Shown in pieces: positions 6,728-40,919 of a stretch of 64,000 bases of DNA. A program made the translations under genes and the position numbers. This DNA is from Hemiscyllium ocellatum (taxonomy: Eukaryota): contig NC_083415.1 in the NCBI RefSeq assembly GCF_020745735.1, positions 9,999,731-10,063,730 on the forward strand, read 5' to 3'. Position 1 is the stretch's first letter. Each line of letters opens with the position of its first letter. The notes beneath the pieces are model-generated. The model was not told the origin of the DNA. It saw only the letters and a list, made by a program, of their open reading frames with translations, and searched no databases.

Positions 6728-21590
<14,863 letters not shown>

Positions 21591-30428: not shown

Positions 30429-31119
30429 ACCCATTATCATTCAGAGTATTCACTCTGCCCCACCATCTCTTTTGTCGTTTAATGTGCCCTGCCATCCATT
30501 CTATTACAGGGATTCCCTATTGTACTTTTACCATATCCCAATTTTTTTTTGTTTCATATCTAGTATGGTTCTAACTTCCCACAGCTGAAAGCCCTAGCTG
30601 TTTTACTACAAATGCTGCCTGAATTTTCTCTGGGAGATTACAGTGCACAACTGGCTACTGCGTCTTCCACATTACCGCAGTTCAGAAAGTATTTCATTGT
30701 AATGCACAGAAATTGATACTGAGATTGTGAACAGCGTAAATTAAATTCTATTTTTGGATACGGTTATGCCATTGATAATAATTAAGATTTTGGATAATCG
30801 GATATTTTGGGTGTATATTGGGGAGGACAATTGGAATTGTGGGTTATTTCAGATCCCATAGATTAGAAACAAGTCATCCTACAGAAGGGACTGACTCAGA
30901 CCAATGATTAAGATTGAGGCTTAGGTTTAGAGACGTAGTCAAAACCCCACTTTTAAAGTGATTGATAACAAACAATTAAACAAAGTGAAACATCAAAGAT
31001 ATGTAGCATTCCCCCAAACATCACAAAACATTTTCATCCTCCCTGAAGGTGACTGAACCTGCAATCCTCCGAAGTTCTTCATCCTTGAATGCGAGGTAAC
31101 AGACTAAACGTTGGAAAAG

Positions 31120-31504
31120 TGAACATGCGCCAGTCAGCACAAGCGCAGATGATGATTTTTGGAGCGTGCATGCGCAGACGGTGATATTGGAGCGCGCGGT
31201 TGGCTTGGCGCAAGCGCAGACGATGAGATTGGTGCGCGCGGGTGGCTTGGCGCAAGCGCAGACGGTGAGATTGGTGCGCGCGGGTGGCTTGGCGCAAACG
31301 CAGACGGTGATATTGGTGCGCGCGGGTGGCCTGGCGCAAGCGCAGACGGTGAGATTGGTGCGCGCGGGTGAGTTGGCGCAAGCGCAGACGGTGATATTGG
31401 TGCGCGCGGGTGGCTTGGCGCAAGTGCAGACGGTGAGATTGGTGCGCGCGGGTGAGTTGGCGCAAGCGCAGACTGTGGAAAAGGCGAGGTGCGGGCAGGT
31501 GAGA
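31120..31504 (+). promoter_or_regulatory. Putative CpG-island promoter and non-coding first exon of the NUDT19-like gene
   Basis: NRF1-like GCGCANGCGC, ATTGG (CCAAT) and a GC-box-like motif in every unit; strong donor CAG|GTGAGA at 31499; free acceptor at 39726 just before the NUDT19 ATG. Confidence 0.6.
31166..31473 (+). repeat. 42-bp CpG-rich minisatellite, 7 full copies plus a partial one
   Basis: Unit gcgcaagcgcagacggtga(g/t)attggtgcgcgcgggtggcttg starting at 31166, 31208, 31250, 31292, 31334, 31376, 31418 and (partial) 31460. Confidence 0.97.
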
Positions 31505-31542
31505 GACGATAGTTGTAGATATGAGTTGATGCTTTTAGCAGA

Positions 31543-32200
31543 TAGGAACATAAGAACTAGGAGCAGGACTAGGAGTACGCCACCTGGTCCCTTGAGCCTG
31601 CCTCGCCATTTAATAAAGTCATGGTTGATCTTTTTGTGGACTCGGCTCCATTTACCTGGCTCTCACCATATCTCTTAATTCCTTTATTCAAAAAAATCTA
31701 TCTTAGCTTTAAAAACGTCAACTTCTTCACTGAGCAGGGAATTCCATAGGGAAGTTCCTTCTCAATTTAGTCTAAATCTGCTCCCTTTAATCTTGAGGCT
31801 ATGCCCTCTTGTCTGAGTTTCACCTGCCAGTGAAAACATTCTATTTTTATCTTATCTATTCCCTTCATAATATTATATGTTTCTATAAGATCATCCTTCA
31901 TTCTTCTGAATTCCAATGAATATAACTCCAGTCCACTCAGCGTCTCCTTAAAAGCCAACCCCCTCAACCCTGGAATCAACATAGTGAACCTTCTCTAGTG
32001 CTAGTACATCCTTTCTCAAATAAGGAGATCCCAAACTGCATACAGTACTCCAAATGTGGCCTCACCAGCATCTTGTACAGCTGCAACATAATCTCCCTGC
32101 TTTTAAACTCAATCCATTTAGCAATGAAGGACAAAATTCCATTTGCCCTACTAATTACTTGTAGTACCTGTAGACTAACTCTCTGTGATTCTTTATGAAA
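31543..32200 (-). mobile_element. CR1 3' fragment
   Basis: Peptide MLIPGLRGLAFKETLSGLELYSLEFRRMKDDLIETYNIMKG. Confidence 0.8.
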
Positions 32201-32799
32201 TATGGTCTAAATAAACTGGTTTCGTCATGCCAAGCATAATTAATTTGTTTTTTTTAAACCTATTCCAGCATTTTTGTCATATGCTGCACCCATCAGTATT
32301 TGCTATATCAAATTCTTGAAGCGCCCACTACTGAAAACCTTCCAGTTAAATACTTGTTTGACAACAAATACCTATACTGTGTGTCTAGAAATTTCTCTAA
32401 TTAAAAATTGGGATAACTAAAGCTATTGTTTTTGGCCCCTGCCACAAAATCCGTTCCCAGGCAACTAACCCCCACTCCCTCTCCCTGAAAATTCTGAGGC
32501 TCATCCAAGCCATTTTAGATTTAGTATTTTTACCTCAAATTGTTGTTGGAAGCTGAAAGGTTTATTTGGCCATTGGAAGAGTGAACCTGGTTCTGTGGTC
32601 CATTCCGAGAAGGTAGGCAAGTTTAGCTCAGATATCCATGTGTGATAAAGAACAAAGAAAATTTACAGCCCAGGAATAGGCCCTTCGGTCCTCCAAGCTT
32701 GAGCCTGTGATGTTATGGAGAAAACAGAGGCTTAACTCTTAGGTATGGGGCTGATTAATACATATTCTTAGATGCAGAGGATTTAGAAAAAAAACGAGG

Positions 32800-33850
32800 A
32801 AGGGAAAAAAAGAGAGGGGAAGGTAGTGGTAATAAGAAAACTGTTAGAATGCTGGAGAGAGAGGATATGCCTGAGAACCCCAAGACAAATTTATTTGGGT
32901 AGAGCTAAGAAATAGATATACCCTAATATTTTTCAATGTATTCTATAAGCTGCCAACTGTGGAAAAGATGTAGATGAACAGATATGCAAGAATATTACAG
33001 AGAAGTGCAAGATTTAGTCAGTCATTAAAATAGGGGATTTTAATTATCCTAAAGTAGACTGGATAGTAATAATGTAAGGATAGGAATGAACAAGAGATTA
33101 TAGTGCCTGATCAGGAGAATTTTCTACATCTGTATGTTTGCAACTTAAGAATAAAGTAAGCAATCCTCGACTGTTCCTTGGAAATGAGGTACACCAATTA
33201 GATAAAGTGTCACAAGGAGATAATTTAGGAGACAGTGATCATTGTATCATGAGGCTGCAGAAAAGGACAAGGAGCAATCCAGAGTAAGAATAAATGGGGA
33301 AGGTCAGTATGGGAGGGGATGGATTTGGCCTAGATAAGATTTACAGTCAAAGTAATAACTCTATTTTTAAAAAAAGACCATTCAGATATAGTAAAGGTAT
33401 ATTCCCAAAAGGGGAGAAGGAAGAAAAAACAAACCCAAAGCTCAGTGAATGATGAAAGAGAAAGTAAGATGAAACAAAAAGAGGCTCTAATACACTAGAT
33501 GGCAGTTGGATAATATATTGAGATTCAAGTTTGATATATATGGTTCAGAGGGAAATTTAAAAACAAGAGCAGCAAAGAGAGTGTATGAAGAGATTGGCAG
33601 CTAACATAACACAGAATCCAAACTCGTCTGTAGACATATAAATTGTAAAAGGGTGGTAAAAATGGGAGTAGGGCTGATTATGAACTAAGAGGATTTATGC
33701 ATCAATACAGAGAGCTTAGCTGAAGTACTTAGTGAGTACTTTGCAAATATTTTTATCAAAAAAGATGTGTCTTAAGTTATGGTGAAACAGGAAATAGTAG
33801 GGAGACTTGATGAATTCAAAATTGATGAAGAGGAGATGATAGTAAGGCTG
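32800..33850 (+). mobile_element. Highly decayed CR1 ORF2 (endonuclease to linker)
   Basis: gggtagagctaagaaa, ggggattttaattatcc, gacagtgatcat motifs collinear with 17490-18400. Confidence 0.65.
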
Positions 33851-35389
33851 TGCAAACCGAACCAAGGAAAAACTTTCCCAAGAGATTTGATTTCAGTTCT
33901 GGTGTGCAGTTTCCCAGGAGGCTAGCCAAATGATCCTGGAACAAGAGAGAAGAAGCTGCCATTGCAGATGCTTCCACGCAGTACACTGTGTGGTTGATTA
34001 ATAAAATAAATTAATAAAACAACACCAAAATGAGGTTTCAATGCCTATCATTCTCTGTCGATCCCAAATACATTGTCTCTTCCTCCTCATGGTAATCCAT
34101 AACCCTGTGCATCTCATTTTATCCTTCTACGCCTCCCTATGCCAACTTATTCCCTCAATGTCACCTTGTGTTCCTGTACCCTCCCTCATAGCCCAACAAA
34201 TCCTTCAGGTCACTGAATGCTCTGTACTTAACCCCCACAACATTACTGCCAACTTATGCCCCTGTACCCACCCCATGCTAACATATGCACCTTTACCATC
34301 CCCGCATTCTTCCATTTCGTAGATGCCAACCAATCTGTCCATTCATCCCCATAGCACTTTATTTTCCTTATCACAGCTTAGTGCTAACATGCCAACCCAT
34401 TTGTACCACTCTCTATGGCCAAACATTAGGAACTATGCTGACATAAAATAAAATTGTGCCTGTAGATAACATCACTGTTTGAAATCAAAACTCTTGTTGA
34501 GTAAAAAAAACTCAATACATTGAAATTTCTTCAATAAATCTTTCATGAAAATAAATGTTTCACTCTTACTAAATTACTTAAGAAACAAACATTTGTATTT
34601 TACAACCACTTGTCAATCAGACTATTCACTTAATGAACATCCAACTGTGAAATTAGTCATGAAGCACTAATCCTATACTTGCAACTGTTGGGCTATGTCA
34701 TCAGATAAAGGGAAAGCATCAATTTTTTAAAAAAACTATAGACTTTTCATTAACTGTAAAGCTCAGGAGTTAAATAACTTGACAGTTCTTTTGGGATTAT
34801 GCACCCTTAGGCATATTCATCTACAATTTTAACAGTCCCAAAAGGGTACCTGCTCCACTCTGATCTGTGCAGTACCCAAAAGATACCTGACCCCTCTCGA
34901 AAGTACCTGCTATTCCTTGACCCTAACAGTATTTGCGACCATATCCAAAGGTGCATCCTGGTTATTCAAACAAATCCACAAACTTCAGAGCAACTCTTTA
35001 ACAGATGTGAACATACCAAATTCCATGCTACTGGAATATCAAAACTCCATTTCAGTAGAGATAGCCGATGATTTAAATGGCCAGTGTCTCCTTAAAATTT
35101 GCCATACGTCAAATCAGATTTGACCCAAGTTGGATCCTGCAAAAATGGGAGTGCAGTGTTTGGTGATGGGACTTGCAATTGCAGGCCATCTCTGCTGTTT
35201 ATTGTGGTGAAAATCTTGCCCTGATTCTTCATAATTTAAGATCTCACAGAATTACTAATTCACCTTGTGCTTGCTGTTTCCTACCTTCAGCTCACCTCTC
35301 CCAATTCATTGCCTCCTCTGACATTTTGCCAATTCTCCCACATGCCATTTCCCTTTATATAGTTTGTGCGCAGAAATGATTAAAGAGGA

Positions 35390-35910
35390 TGGGGCAGTTT
35401 GGCCTCAGCTGGAGTATTCTGTCCAGTCTGGATCTCACACTTTCGAAAGAAAGTGAAGGCATTAGTTTGCAGAAAAATATCATGGAATTGTTCTAACTTC
35501 AATTATGTAGCTAGATTGGAGAAGCTGTGATTATTCTTGGAGAAGAGAAAATTGAGAGGAGATTGAATGGAGATGTTCAAGATGAAAAGTGGTTTGGACA
35601 AGTAGATATGGAGAAATTGTTCCCATTGGATGGATGGAGAAACAGTGATTGGCAAAAAAAAGGAACAACAATGTGATGAATATCTTTACAGTGAATCATT
35701 CGGATCTGGAATGCACCTGAGATTGTGATGAGGACCGATTCAATTGTGGCCTTCCAAAGAAATTAGGATCATTATCTGAAAAGGGAAAATTTGCAGGACT
35801 AAAGGAAACAGATCAGGCGAATTGCAATAGGTGCATTATTCTTCCAGAGAACTGGTGCAAATCCAGCCAGCCTAATGGCATCCTGTAACAATTCAATTAG
35901 TCTATGAATT
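35390..35910 (+). mobile_element. Decayed CR1 3' fragment
   Basis: cctcagctggagtattctgtccag..gagaagagaaaattgagaggagat. Confidence 0.6.
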
Positions 35911-36439
35911 CTGCATAGACCCTGCATCAATTCATCTACTCCAGAAACCTGCACTTGAGTCTTTGTTACCTTCGGCCTTGGCTCTTTTCCCACATTCCTG
36001 TCCTCCGTATCCTCCCCACTGTAAATTAGAAATAATCCAAAAATCTGCTGCTTGAGTCCTAACTCCTGCCAAATCCCATTCACCCACAGAGCTGTGCTGC
36101 TCATGTATAATGGCTCCAGGTGAAGTAAATCTTAAGTTTAAAGTTCTCATCCTTGTTTTCAAATTTTTTCATAGCTTCATGTCTCCCTGTTTTTGTAATT
36201 TTATTTTGACATATCTAATTCTGACCACTTGAACACCCCCTTAACTCCATCATTTCTGGCTGTACTTTTAGTTTCCTGGGAGATCTGGAAATCTCTTCCT
36301 TCCATGAAGCTCCACTTAACTTCTTTTCAGTTAGCTACCTCTTTGATCAAGCTTTGAGCGATCTGACCTATTGACTTGGTGTCTCATTTTGCTTTATAAT
36401 GCTCATGTGAGATAACTTAGGGTATTTGTTTTCATTTAT

Positions 36440-36690
36440 TCTTTCATAGGATCTGGCAAATCCAGCATTTGTTGCCCTTTCCTAATTGCCCTTGAAGTGA
36501 GTGCCTGGCTATTCCAGAAAGCAGTTGACTGGAGTCACAAGTTGGCCAGACAAGGTAGGTCAATGGATTTCCTTCTCCATAGAGAAGCAGTGAACTAGAT
36601 GGGATTTTTTTCAATAATTTCATGGTGACCACTATAGGGACTAGCTTTTGAAGTCCAGATAAGATTGATTGAATTTAAATTTCATCAGCA
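36440..36690 (-). mobile_element. SINE remnant (MetaSINE-like)
   Basis: cagcatttgttgcccttcctaattgcccttg..ctggagtcac..ggatttccttc..agtgaactagatggg. Confidence 0.45.
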
Positions 36691-37590
36691 TTAGCTACTG
36701 TATGTTACTGAACAATTTGTTATTATAACCTTGTCATCAATTTAATTATACTGGCATTAGTTCAATGTCCTCAGTTCATGGCAGACTCTGCTGTCCACAT
36801 CCAGTCCCAATAGAAATCCTGTGCATGCAGCTTTGCTAACCTACATTGGCTTCTGATGCCTCAACATCTAAAATTAAAAATTATCTTATTCAATTGCCTT
36901 GAACTCCCCTATCTCATTAACTCCTCTAATGCTACAACCTGCACCACACTATTGTACACCTTTACCAATCCCATCACCTGTGATTAATGGTTGTGTTTTC
37001 AGCCGTGGGATTGATTCTGCTGCTTGAGGAATCTAAAACACAGGGACACAGCCTAAGGGTAAGGAAGTGTTGATTATTTAAGATAGCGATGATGCGAAAA
37101 TACTTCACTCACAATTCTCTACTCCAGAGGATTGTGGATTCGTAATTTTTTATTAGATTTAAGGCTGGAACAGGCAGATTGTTTTCTCTCAGGGAGGCAT
37201 TGGAGTTAGAAAGTAGTTTGAGAAAGTTGAGAACAAGTCCAAAGTCATCAATGATCATACTGAATGGCAGCACAGACTTGATGGGTCATATTTGTCTGCT
37301 CCAGCTCCTGTTTATTGTATTTTTGGATGAATTTTGAAGCAGACATTGAACCCAGATTCCTGGTATCTTATCAGGCAAGATTTATTTGCAGATGTTCTGC
37401 CAAAGCTCCATCCCATCAGGTAAAGAAAATACTGGAAATAATATTTAGGAAGAGAGAAACAGGGTTGATATGTATCCTGATGACATGTCATCAGAAAGTT
37501 TTATATATATGAAATTTTAACTCAAATTGCTCACAGACAGCAACTGGAAAGTAGTGGTAGTGCAACTGAGTACCTCTGAAAAGGTTCTTG

Positions 37591-37992
37591 TTAGCTGAAA
37601 ATGTGTTGCTGGAAAAGTGCAGCAGGTCAGGCAGCATCCAAGGAGCAGGGGAATCGACATTTCGAGCATGAGGCCTTCTTCAGGAATGAGGAAATTGTGT
37701 CCAGCAGGCTAAGATAAAAGGTAGGGGGGAGGGGCGTTGGAAATGTGATAGATGGAAGGAGGAAGGAGGTACCTCCTTCCACCTATAGCACTTCCAACGC
37801 CCCTCCTCCAAGTCCCTCCTCCCTACCTTTTATCTTAGCCTGCTGGACACACTGTCCTCATTCCTGAAGAAGGCCTCATGTCCAAAACGTCGATTCTCTT
37901 GCTCCTTGGATGCTGCCTGATCTGCTGCGCTTTTCCAGCAACACATTTTCAGTTCTGATCTCCAGCATCTGCAGTCCTCATTTTCTCCTCAG
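37591..37992. mobile_element. Penelope-derived palindrome with about 180-bp arms and two opposed hammerhead-like motifs
   Basis: Centre ggaaggaggt|acctccttcc at 37770/37771; TSD aggttcttg at 37582-37590 and 37993-38001. Confidence 0.9.
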
Positions 37993-39731
37993 AGGTTCTT
38001 GATAGGCAGGGATGGGTAACTAAACCAAGTCTAGGGCAAGGAAGACCAAGGCTCCATCCTGAGACCATTTGCATTTTCTTTTCTGTTTTTTTTTAAATTA
38101 AAGACAAAGAGCTCAGTTTTCCAAGATTAAAATTCTCTACACTTTAACTGATAGTTTCACAGCTTGTGAGCAACAATTGTCAGTTTTTGATCGCTTAGAG
38201 ATATAGACACCAGATCAGGAAGCATAACAAAAGCTGACAGATTTAAAAAGCTATGGCAATAAGACCTGTAAATGCTGCCCTCTTCAGCCCACAACTAAAC
38301 CAATATTAATTATTTATAAACTTACCTGACTAGGTTTCTACTTTTTAACAGATTAATCCTCAGCAAAACTCGGTTACTCAGACTACTGACTAATACTGCA
38401 TCAAAAAATGAGACAAGATATGGTCATGGAGAAAATGAAGCAGGATTGTACAAACTATTTTACTACACTTGTTTTAACTGCTGCATTGCCTGGTTTCACT
38501 AATCGGAGTTAACACATGAGCGACAAAAGATTCATGGCACGTAAACATGTCATCTCTAGGTTGGGATTGTACATAGGTGAGATATTGGAACTCTTGATGA
38601 TTTTTCATTTTTTAAAATTGTTTTTGATTTGGAACAATGAGTTGACAGCTGAAGGTGACCTTTGCACTGTGAGCATCAGCATTGTATTTTAAAAACAAAT
38701 AAACTTATATTAGTTTATAAACCCAAACCTAAAAGTTATTTGCAGGTTGTTACTTGTTCAAAGAATAGTCTAGACATTTCATTCCAGAGATGCATTCTGC
38801 CCAAACAGATATTGAATGTTAACTGCAGAGAGGGCTAACCAATCTAACAAAGGGAAACCAAAGCTTGAATTGTTCTTGAATTGTGTGTTTCAGAGGATTG
38901 TGTTAGCCAAACATATGGGAGAGAGTTTGCTTGCTCCCTGGTTATCCTTTCAATATACTGAAAGTTCAGAGAATAGTATCCCAGATATGAATATTAAGTA
39001 AATATTCCTTGGAGACCATGGGAAACTATTTGTATGCACGGGTGACTTTGTAAACTAAGCAAGATACAGTTCCATGTACCTGTTATGTTATGGATCATAC
39101 AGTCTGCTTATCCAAACTGTCCAGTTACATATTATTTAATTTTTCTTTTGATTTATCCCTTAACTGTATCTCTTTGTCTATCTTTGTGTGACTGGGGCTA
39201 GAATAAAAGAAGATTGGGTTTCAATCATAGATAATAATTAGATTATCTTGTTGTTTAACTTTCAACTGGAAAGAATGTTTAATCTTTTGTTTAGCCTGAG
39301 TGCTTCATGTCTGATATTAGCTACTCATGAAGTCTGGTTCTGGTTGTTCAAAACATCTGGTTAGGAACAATTGGTGTCAATTTTGATGGTCATTGAAGGT
39401 TTTCATTTTATTGCATTGTAAATACAGGGATAAGGAGGCTGATTTGATTTGGCTGCTGTCTTTGTGTGGAATTACTATTGCTGAAGATTAAAATGTTGAA
39501 TGAAAAACCTTTGGTAGGGCTAATGGGTTCCCACTTACAATGTCTACTCTCTATGTTTCCAAATTTGGTGTATTTGCAAGGTCTTAAGCACTAGATTGCT
39601 AGTTCAAGAAGAGGGTAAAAGGTTTACTAATTTGAGCAAGAGGACAGTGGTGTCGCTGATGAACTGTAAAAGCTCTACAGTTCCAGCAATAACTATTAAG
39701 GTAATAAATTGTCCTTTTTTTTGCAGCGAAG

Positions 39732-40919
39732 ATGAATCGAGACTTGAAGTATTGGAAGGAAGCAGCTACTGTCATCTTGGCTTCAGGTGTACGAAATTGC
39801 TTTGGGAATAAAGATTCCACCAGCACACAGGCTAGTTGGCCTCCACGTTCGGTACTTAAACAAGAGAGAAATGTAATTCACTCATGGTTGGAGAAGCCTG
39901 TCTTTGATTATGCTGTACTTATGTTACAGCGGAGTGCAAAAAGCAGTTTCTTGCCTCATGCTCAGGTATTTCCTGGAGGTACGATCAGTCCGTCTGATTT
40001 TTCCAGTGAGTGGATTCAGATGTTTCAGTCCTTTTGCAAGCCACCTAACTTTAAACTTGGTACAGTCAAACAAACCTCCAAAAGACCTCCAATTTTTGCG
40101 ACGGACAGGAGAAAGCTAGGATCTGAAATCCCTGGAGAGGTGGCTTTTCGCATTTGTGCTGTTAGAGAAACCTTTGAAGAATCAGGGATTCTACTTGTGA
40201 AGCCAAATACCCCTGAAACATGTTCGAGCAGCCAAGGAGCCATAAAACTCACACAGTACGACCAAAAGGAACTTGCAAATTGGAGGCTGCTTGTGCAGAA
40301 AAATGCAGCAAATTTTATAAAGCTTTGCAAAGAGCTGGACTGTATACCAAATATTTGGGCATTGAAGGAGTGGAGTAATTGGTTAACTCCCACTTACTTG
40401 GAGAGTAAGCGTTTTGATACTGCATTCTTCATCTGCTGTTTGCAAGAGATTCCTTTCACATTGCAAGATGGTTATGAAACTGTTTTCTACAACTGGATGT
40501 CCCCACCTGATTTTATTAAAGGCCACAATTCGGAGAAATTCTACATCCCTCCCCCGCAGTGGTATGAACTGAACAGACTCTGCCAAATACCCCATTACCA
40601 AGATCTGCAGCAGTTTAGCCAGCATCGGGCATTGGAAGGCTGTGAGCGATGGCTTCCAGTCCGTTTCCTTGCTTCTGATGGTTGTGCAATTTTGTACCCT
40701 GGGGATGAACTTTATCCAGAGGATCCTGATTACACAGGAGAAAAGAAGATGAACATCAGTTCCTCAAAAACTCTGGAACAATTGAGGTTAGAGGTTACCA
40801 AACTAAATCGCGCAGAGCTGAGAGGTCTGCATGGCATAACACTGTACGTGAATATTGAGCCCCCGTATAAACATATCAATCCACTAACTATGGGATCATG
40901 TCAAAACTGTCACCTGTAA
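39732..40919 (+). CDS. NUDT19: Acyl-CoA diphosphatase NUDT19-like (Nudix), 395 aa, single coding exon
   Basis: WKEAATVILA, FLPHAQVFPGG, Nudix box AFRICAVRETFEESGILL, WSNWLTP, RFDTAFF, PPPQWYE, PGDELY, PTS1-type CHL terminus; acceptor tttttttgcag at 39726. Confidence 0.93.
   Translation: MNRDLKYWKEAATVILASGVRNCFGNKDSTSTQASWPPRSVLKQERNVIHSWLEKPVFDYAVLMLQRSAKSSFLPHAQVFPGGTISPSDFSSEWIQMFQSFCKPPNFKLGTVKQTSKRPPIFATDRRKLGSEIPGEVAFRICAVRETFEESGILLVKPNTPETCSSSQGAIKLTQYDQKELANWRLLVQKNAANFIKLCKELDCIPNIWALKEWSNWLTPTYLESKRFDTAFFICCLQEIPFTLQDGYETVFYNWMSPPDFIKGHNSEKFYIPPPQWYELNRLCQIPHYQDLQQFSQHRALEGCERWLPVRFLASDGCAILYPGDELYPEDPDYTGEKKMNISSSKTLEQLRLEVTKLNRAELRGLHGITLYVNIEPPYKHINPLTMGSCQNCHL

What the first reader, a model, noticed from the sequence alone, without database searches (positions are those of the whole stretch)
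31120..31504. A 42-bp minisatellite that appears to be a promoter: tandem NRF1/CCAAT/GC-box cassette ending in a splice donor
Seen: 7+ copies of a 42-bp unit form a dense CpG island in AT-rich DNA. Each unit carries GCGCANGCGCA, ATTGG and GCGCGCGGGTGG. The array ends 25 nt before a consensus donor (CAG|GTGAGA, 31499), and the next gene has an orphan acceptor 5 nt before its ATG (39726). Known: NRF1, NF-Y and Sp/KLF sites typify housekeeping promoters, and methylated CpGs decay in vertebrates, so intact CpGs imply hypomethylation or recent expansion. Inference: a promoter module was amplified into a VNTR driving the NUDT19 copy, so repeat number could tune expression.
Basis: partly seen in the sequence, partly recalled or inferred. 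Interest (0 to 1): 0.75.

Follow-up and report, generated by a model that had tools for sequence, protein, structure and literature searches.

The report
Expanded NRF1-like repeat in NUDT19-like promoter island
In the epaulette shark, an old three-unit repeat inside a conserved CpG island about 8 kb upstream of a NUDT19-like gene has grown to nine units; the island is probably that gene's promoter and non-coding first exon, which makes this an ordinary though well-documented promoter minisatellite.

Summary
A 42-bp array (7.4 copies by TRF, 31168-31477) forms the only strong CpG island in the 64-kb window (CpG o/e 1.38 against 0.30). The genome is Hemiscyllium ocellatum.

The same island sits at the same place in Chiloscyllium punctatum and whale shark, but with three units: two full units and a diverged third that holds the splice donor. 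The epaulette shark amplified the middle unit to seven copies. A 14-nt core, GCGCA[A/G]GCGCAGAC, is invariant in all old units while the rest of each unit has drifted. The core is NRF1-like: two GCGC half-sites with a 2-bp spacer. The CCAAT and GC-box parts are not conserved.

Three things support the reading as first exon of the NUDT19-like gene:
- The acceptor just before the ATG is conserved down to a skate.
- A public C. punctatum gene model uses the orthologous donor.
- A probable RNA run holds a quarter of the array region's sampled words.

NCBI isoform X1 uses a different, young exon at 38.5 kb. Whether copy number tunes expression, or varies between individuals, is untested. The scan has noted similar promoter minisatellites elsewhere in this genome (s1-147312, s1-148393).

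The parts
31051..31520 (+). CpG island, the only strong one in the window. GC skew turns from negative to positive at its 5' edge (about 31100).
   Evidence: orthologous islands in L001 and L002
31058..31086 (+). Block almost invariant in epaulette shark, bamboo shark and whale shark, just upstream of the first unit. It is a candidate core-promoter or TSS-proximal element; this is inference only.
31137..31165 (+). Remnant of ancestral unit 1: 29 nt, about 14 nt deleted relative to C. punctatum.
31166..31459 (+). Seven 42-bp units derived from ancestral unit 2. Each has the NRF1-like core (exact or one mismatch off), ATTGG and a GGGTGG/GGGTGA box. There is an 84-bp higher order (units 5-6 resemble units 7-8). 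Internal donor-like sites lie at 31265, 31349, 31368, 31433 and 31452.
31460..31498 (+). Ancestral unit 3, old and diverged: the 3' end of the putative non-coding exon 1.
   Evidence: 41/42 identical to C. punctatum unit 3 and 38/42 to whale shark unit 3
31499..31504 (+). 5' splice site GTGAGA after CAG.
   Evidence: It is GT in C. punctatum and is used by model GCC31796.1. It is GC in whale shark, which has a GT donor 20 nt further on.
38352..38576 (+). Alternative exon of NCBI isoform X1 (ATG at 38534, donor TACATAG|GTGAGA). It has a possible acceptor at 38351, so it may be a cassette exon. It is young: the donor is GC in C. punctatum and the region is inverted in whale shark.
39713..39731 (+). 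Pyrimidine tract, acceptor AG (39725-39726) and 5 nt of leader before the ATG.
   Evidence: conserved in L001 to L005, including both skate paralogues
39732..40919 (+). Single-exon coding sequence of the NUDT19-like acyl-CoA diphosphatase: 395 aa, NUDIX domain.

Best explanation
The array is a lineage-specific expansion inside an old, conserved CpG island. That island is most likely the TATA-less promoter plus non-coding first exon of the NUDT19-like gene.

The ancestor of carpet sharks already had three 42-bp units. Each carried an NRF1-like site: GCGC, a 2-bp spacer, GCGC, then AGAC. The third unit held the exon-1 splice donor. In the Hemiscyllium lineage the middle unit was copied to seven, partly as an 84-bp pair.

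Inferred mechanism: an NRF1-type factor, or another factor that reads GCGC pairs, binds the phased sites (42 bp is four helical turns). Transcription starts at the 5' edge of the array or inside it. The leader is spliced from 31498 to 39727, 5 nt before the ATG, sometimes by way of a young exon at 38.4-38.6 kb.

The expansion tripled the number of sites and lengthened the island. Its effect on expression is unknown and may be small.
For: Shown here:
- Array and island.
- Orthologous, colinear loci in C. punctatum (about 93% identity) and whale shark (about 77-81%), each with an island at the same spot but only three units.
- The 14-nt core is identical in all three whale shark units (14/14) while the other 28 positions match at 11-15/28 (Fisher p = 1.5e-3 to 8e-5).
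- GCGCNNGCGC occurs nowhere else in the window or in the two orthologous loci.
- The acceptor 4-5 nt before the ATG is conserved from carpet sharks to Heptranchias and to both skate paralogues, so an upstream non-coding exon is an old feature.
- The N-terminus of C. punctatum model GCC31796.1 (P0124) is the translation of the orthologous units and ends at the orthologous donor.
- NCBI lists a 395-aa product beside the 411-aa isoform X1, so a second 5' structure exists.
- Run X2 is small, comes from the assembly's own sample and holds 70% of the coding-exon words. I infer from this that it is RNA. It holds 25% of the words of 30900-31540.
- GC skew is positive on the + strand, matching the gene's direction, in all three species.
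- CpGs in the units are intact: 1 CpG-to-TpG change in about 35 sites.

From the literature: NRF1 binds GCGCNTGCGC as a dimer on two GCGC half-sites separated by 2 bp, and tolerates other central dinucleotides at a few-fold cost in affinity (PMC10810270).
Against: - No junction read or TSS datum was obtained.
- The only NCBI isoform whose N-terminus I could place, X1, starts coding in another exon at 38534.
- The C. punctatum model contains a 10-nt micro-exon without a pyrimidine tract, which looks like a frame-fixing artefact. That model may not rest on RNA.
- Whale shark has GC, not GT, at the orthologous donor.
- Zebra shark shows no homologous island within 10 kb. It has a different island 1.5 kb upstream.
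- The central dinucleotide of the site is AA or AG, not the preferred AT/NT.
- X2's kind is the tool's guess, and I could not tell which part of the stretch it holds.
Confidence: 0.6

Rival explanations
1. The island is an orphan CpG island: the promoter of an unannotated non-coding transcript, or an enhancer. Under this reading the NUDT19-like gene is driven from a non-CpG promoter near 38.3-38.5 kb, and the donor at 31498 serves another RNA or none.
For: NCBI isoform X1 starts coding at 38534 in an exon much closer to the gene. No junction evidence was obtained. The scan has noted several 'orphan CpG promoter with donor' islands in this genome.
Against: - The 38.5-kb exon's donor is GT only in the epaulette shark: it is GC in C. 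punctatum, and the region is inverted in whale shark. The acceptor before the ATG, by contrast, is conserved to skates, so the conserved first exon must lie elsewhere.
- The 38.5-kb exon has its own good acceptor at 38351, which fits a cassette exon.
- The C. punctatum model links the island to the gene.
- No ORF with a Pfam hit lies between 21.6 and 39.7 kb.
Confidence: 0.22
2. The first exon is as in the best explanation, but the array matters as RNA rather than as promoter DNA. It lies downstream of the start site and lengthens a 5' leader that carries an upstream ORF. That ORF starts at ATG 31222, stays open because 42 bp is 14 codons, and after splicing ends at a TGA overlapping the main ATG. 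Copy number would then act on translation.
For: - GC skew flips at about 31100, upstream of the units, in all three species.
- One frame is open through the whole array, and the spliced product stops at ATGA.
- The homologous ATG and open frame exist in whale shark and C. punctatum, by my reading.
- The C. punctatum model treats the units as transcribed.
Against: - The start site is unknown.
- A GC-rich 42-bp unit has a fair chance of being open in one frame.
- The leader folds less stably than shuffled versions (z = +2.7), so there is no structured-leader effect.
- What is conserved is a DNA-site-like 14-mer, not the peptide.
Confidence: 0.12
3. The array is a dispersed or transposon-borne satellite that happens to lie here and has no link to the gene.
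For: A transposon-like insertion (31544-32186, absent from whale shark) begins 45 bp after the donor. I could not search the whole shark genome.
Against: - The unit and its flanks are orthologous at the same spot in three species.
- There is no other copy in the window or in about 120 kb of related loci.
- The translated array has no match above 46% identity among 1.8 billion representative proteins.
- CpGs are intact.
Confidence: 0.03

Closest known systems
Promoter-associated tandem repeats and VNTRs in humans (Quilez et al. 2016, PMC4857002). Classic single cases, from my own knowledge and not checked here: ALOX5 Sp1-site repeats, MAOA uVNTR, the TYMS 28-bp repeat, the SV40 21-bp GC-box repeats.
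   Same: A short unit carrying a transcription-factor site is multiplied head to tail inside a CpG-island promoter or 5' leader. Copy number differs between lineages.
   Different: Here polymorphism within the species and any effect on expression or methylation are untested. The conserved site is NRF1-like rather than Sp1/USF. The three-unit state is old and shared by three genera.
NRF1 target promoters (consensus GCGCNTGCGC; structure and affinities in PMC10810270)
   Same: Two GCGC half-sites with a 2-bp spacer, in a TATA-less CpG island next to a metabolic housekeeping-type gene. Sites sit near the presumed start.
   Different: The central dinucleotide is AA (hemiscylliids) or AG (whale shark) instead of AT/NT, so the affinity is probably lower. 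Binding was not tested. The conserved core extends 3' by AGAC, which is not part of the NRF1 consensus.
Other minisatellites at promoters and splice sites in this same genome, noted by this scan (s1-147312 SNAPC5 GC-box/CCAAT array; s1-148393 ARPC3; s1-146943 LSM1 splice-donor array)
   Same: GC-rich functional sequence at a gene's 5' end amplified in tandem. Here too the units carry donor-like GGTGAG(A/T) motifs, and the last unit holds the donor.
   Different: This is a different locus, unit and motif. Here the ancestral copy number and the lineage of expansion could be established from two outgroups.
Tandem promoter monomers of mouse L1 elements (own knowledge)
   Same: Promoter activity is carried by tandem units at the 5' end of a transcript.
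   Different: Those are part of a transposon present in thousands of copies. This is a single orthologous locus next to a host gene.

Membership tests
CpG island | Length at least 200 bp, GC at least 0.5, CpG observed/expected at least 0.6 | tested here: met
   385 bp, GC 0.64, o/e 1.38. The orthologous stretches have o/e 1.39 and 1.43.
CpG-island promoter with first exon | Transcription start sites inside the island | not testable with these tools
The indirect evidence is the GC-skew flip at about 31100 and a probable RNA run holding 25% of the words.
CpG-island promoter with first exon | Splice donor used and joined to the downstream gene | tested here: inconclusive
   The donor matches the MAG|GTRAGT consensus at 8 of 9 positions. 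It is GT in C. punctatum and used by model GCC31796.1, but GC in whale shark. There are no junction reads.
CpG-island promoter with first exon | The downstream gene needs an upstream exon (conserved acceptor before the ATG) | tested here: met
   YTTGCAG|CRAAG-ATG, or the equivalent, in six loci from five further species, including both skate paralogues.
NRF1 binding site | Two GCGC half-sites separated by 2 bp | tested here: met
   GCGCAAGCGC five times in the window, twice in L001; GCGCAGGCGC three times in L002; nowhere else in those sequences. Definition from PMC10810270.
NRF1 binding site | Preferred central dinucleotide AT (consensus NT), giving a TGCGC half-site on both strands | tested here: not met
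   The centre is AA or AG. In PMC10810270 a CG centre costs about 3.5-fold in affinity. I therefore call the site NRF1-like, not an NRF1 site.
NRF1 binding site | Binding by NRF1 protein | not testable with these tools
   Needs EMSA, ChIP or DAP-seq with shark NRF1.
VNTR (polymorphic minisatellite) | Copy number varies between individuals of the species | not tested
Only a between-species difference is shown: 3 units against 9.
Expression-tuning promoter repeat | Copy number correlates with transcript level or reporter activity | not testable with these tools
   No expression data by genotype.
   ATTGG is absent from the whale shark units and occurs once in C. punctatum. The GGGTGG box is variable.

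The most novel reading that the evidence does not exclude
The array is a phased homotypic cluster of weak NRF1-type sites (42 bp is four helical turns). Its copy number is polymorphic in epaulette sharks and sets the level of NUDT19-like expression. It would be one instance of a genome-wide tendency of this shark's CpG-island promoters and first-exon junctions to grow minisatellites; the scan has noted several others. That tendency might arise because recombination or replication slippage is concentrated at unmethylated islands.
Probability: 0.12. Interest if true: 0.6.

Novelty: new member of a known kind. Interest (0 to 1): 0.35.

Why it matters
Promoter minisatellites are known in humans, but their origin is rarely traceable. 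Here two outgroups fix the ancestral state at three units. They date the expansion to one lineage and show which 14 nt of the unit are under constraint. The result is a natural 3-versus-9-copy series for testing whether multiplying a weak GC-rich site changes promoter output or CpG-island size.

The work also corrects the gene picture. The NUDT19-like gene of sharks and skates has a conserved 5'-UTR intron, and the exon used by NCBI's isoform X1 is a young addition.

Tried and rejected
I therefore have no depth, junction or copy-number data.
This was an oversight. Nothing from those places is used in this report, and no later call to a search tool included them.
- The exact look-up of the 395-aa product found nothing.
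- A search with the N-terminal 130 aa for transcript fragments found nothing.
- A search of 1.8 billion representative proteins with the translated array gave only low-complexity matches of 16-46% identity.
- No DNA could be fetched for C. plagiosum, Carcharodon, Heterodontus or the epaulette shark's own record.
- I could not find the paper describing the C. punctatum gene models, so I cannot say whether that model used RNA hints.
- Rfam and tRNA scans of the window were blank.
- The leader RNA is not unusually structured (z = +2.7).

Full report
**What is there.**
Tandem Repeats Finder reports one array at 31168-31477: period 42, 7.4 copies, 91% matches. It is one of only two arrays in the 64-kb window. 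The stretch 31120-31504 has GC 0.64 and CpG observed/expected 1.38, against 0.42 and 0.30 for the window. Nothing else between about 16.7 and 43.7 kb qualifies as a CpG island.

The core GCGCANGCGCAGAC, allowing one mismatch, occurs eight times, all in the array, against none expected. The donor CAG|GTGAGA (exon end 31498) and the acceptor TTTTTTTTGCAG|CGAAG-ATG (exon start 39727) are as described. The ORF 39732-40919 encodes a 395-aa NUDIX protein. It is 100% identical to 'acyl-coenzyme A diphosphatase NUDT19-like' of Hemiscyllium ocellatum.

**The array is an expansion of an old three-unit module.**
I fetched the orthologous loci of Chiloscyllium punctatum (L001) and whale shark (L002). Both are colinear with the window, at about 93% and 77-81% identity. 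In both, the only CpG island upstream of the gene lies at the orthologous spot: o/e 1.39 and 1.43 against a background of 0.26. Each holds only three 42-bp units, two full units and a diverged third that carries the donor.

In the epaulette shark, unit 1 is a 29-nt remnant (31137-31165). Unit 2 has become seven copies (31166-31459). Unit 3 (31460-31501) is 41/42 identical to C. punctatum's third unit and 38/42 to the whale shark's. Self-matches are best at an offset of 84 bp (93.8%), and units 5-6 resemble units 7-8. Part of the growth was therefore by pairs.

Copies differ by 1-8 of 42 positions, so the expansion is not brand new. Even so, only about one of some 35 CpGs has decayed to TpG. 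Together with the conserved island in the outgroups, this points to long-standing germ-line hypomethylation rather than mere youth of the repeat.

**What is constrained.**
Across the six old units of whale shark and C. punctatum, the first 13-14 positions are almost invariant and the rest has drifted. In whale shark the three units agree at 14/14 core positions but only at 11-15 of the other 28 (Fisher p = 1.5e-3 to 8e-5).

The core has two GCGC half-sites with a 2-bp spacer. This is the geometry NRF1 reads as a dimer (GCGCNTGCGC; PMC10810270). The centre is AA or AG rather than AT, which by that paper's measurements should cost a few-fold in affinity. I therefore call the site NRF1-like.

ATTGG is missing from the whale shark units and occurs once in C. 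punctatum, and the GGGTGG box varies.

**Is it the promoter and first exon of the NUDT19-like gene?**

Evidence for:
- The acceptor 4-5 nt before the ATG is conserved in bamboo, whale and zebra sharks, in Heptranchias and in both tandem paralogues of the little skate. A non-coding upstream exon is therefore an old feature.
- The island is the only one upstream of the gene, and no ORF with a Pfam hit lies between the tubulin gene and it, or between it and the gene.
- The public C. punctatum model GCC31796.1 (P0124, 438 aa) begins inside the orthologous units and leaves them at the orthologous donor.
- NCBI has a 395-aa product beside the 411-aa isoform X1, so there are at least two 5' structures.
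- Run X2 holds 70% of the coding-exon words and 25% of the words of 30900-31540. It is a small run from the assembly's own sample, which is why I take it to be RNA.
- GC skew is positive on the gene's strand and flips at about 31100 in all three species.

Evidence against, or missing:
- Isoform X1's first 14 residues are coded at 38534-38576 with their own donor.
- The C. punctatum model includes a 10-nt micro-exon with no pyrimidine tract, whose AG is lost in the epaulette shark. It looks like a device to fuse an upstream ORF to the main ORF, so the model may be partly ab initio.
- Whale shark has GC at the orthologous donor and a GT donor 20 nt further on.
- Zebra shark shows no homologous island within 10 kb.

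The 38.5-kb exon does not displace the island as the conserved first exon. Its donor is GT only in the epaulette shark (GC in C. punctatum), and the whole 35.7-39.0 kb block is inverted in whale shark. It also has a good acceptor at 38351. The simplest reading is a young cassette exon between the island's exon and the coding exon.

**How it probably works.**
My best reading, at about 0.6: this is a TATA-less CpG-island promoter whose conserved elements are phased NRF1-like sites, 42 bp or four helical turns apart. Initiation occurs at the 5' edge of the units or inside them. The leader is spliced from 31498 to 39727.

Because the skew flips upstream of the units, much of the array may be transcribed. 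In that case an upstream ORF matters. It runs from ATG 31222, stays open through the array because 42 bp is 14 codons, and ends at a TGA overlapping the main ATG after splicing. The expansion would then also lengthen that ORF, which I list as a rival mode of action. The leader is not unusually structured.

Nothing here shows that copy number varies within the species or changes expression.

**Comparison and novelty.**
This is a new member of a known kind, the promoter or 5'-leader minisatellite carrying a factor site (human survey: PMC4857002). The scan has already noted similar arrays at other promoters of this genome (s1-147312, s1-148393).

Three things are worth keeping from this case: the fixed ancestral state, the lineage-specific tripling, and the clear footprint on a 14-nt core.

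A dispersed-satellite origin is unlikely. The flanks are orthologous, no other copies occur in about 180 kb examined, and the translated array has no close protein match. A whole-genome search was not possible.

Noticed in passing
window 35752-39016 against L002 6793-9783: This 3.3-kb block of intron 1 is inverted between the epaulette shark or bamboo shark and the whale shark. It contains the exon used by NCBI isoform X1.
   Followed up: partly
window 38352-38576: The isoform X1 exon (MARKHVISRLGLYI) looks like a young exonisation. Its donor is GT here, GC in C. punctatum, and on the other strand in whale shark.
   Followed up: partly
window 31222-31498 joined to 39727-39735: An upstream ORF is open through the array (42 bp is 14 codons). 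After splicing it stops at a TGA overlapping the main ATG (ATGA). The homologous ATG and frame exist in whale shark and C. punctatum.
   Followed up: partly
L005 3632-4819 and 10001-11173: The little skate has two tandem NUDT19-like genes followed by CSTF1. Both have single-exon coding sequences with an acceptor 4-5 nt before the ATG. The intronless coding sequence is therefore an old gene structure with a 5'-UTR intron, which weakens the 'recent retrogene' note s1-148005.
   Followed up: partly
L001 15183-15192 (window 36545-36554): A 10-nt micro-exon in C. punctatum model GCC31796.1 has AG/GT flanks but no pyrimidine tract. The AG is TG in the epaulette shark. It is probably an annotation artefact that fuses the upstream ORF to the main ORF.
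   Followed up: yes
window 31544-32186: About 640 bp present in both hemiscylliids but absent from whale shark, beginning 45 bp after the donor. It is probably a transposon insertion in intron 1.
   Followed up: no
L003 8351-8600: Zebra shark has a different CpG island 1.5 kb upstream of its NUDT19-like ATG, with one GCGCCGGCGC site and a donor-like CG|GTGAGG. It may be a relocated or replaced first exon.
   Followed up: no
window 31368 and 31452: Two units acquired a near-consensus donor (CGG|GTGAGT) through a GC-to-AG change that was then copied with the 84-bp pair. These are possible alternative donors inside the array.
   Followed up: no
window 16408-21590: A CR1-type LINE (esterase-like ORF1, endonuclease, reverse transcriptase) is directly followed by an ORF with tubulin domains at 20586-21590.
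   Followed up: no
GCA_004010195.1, 64.5-Mb contig (no locus or DNA fetched): C. plagiosum has two NUDT19-like proteins (P0002, 88% identical to the query, and P0122, in the same 90% cluster as the window's protein) on the same 64-Mb chromosome, so a paralogue exists in hemiscylliids.
   Followed up: no
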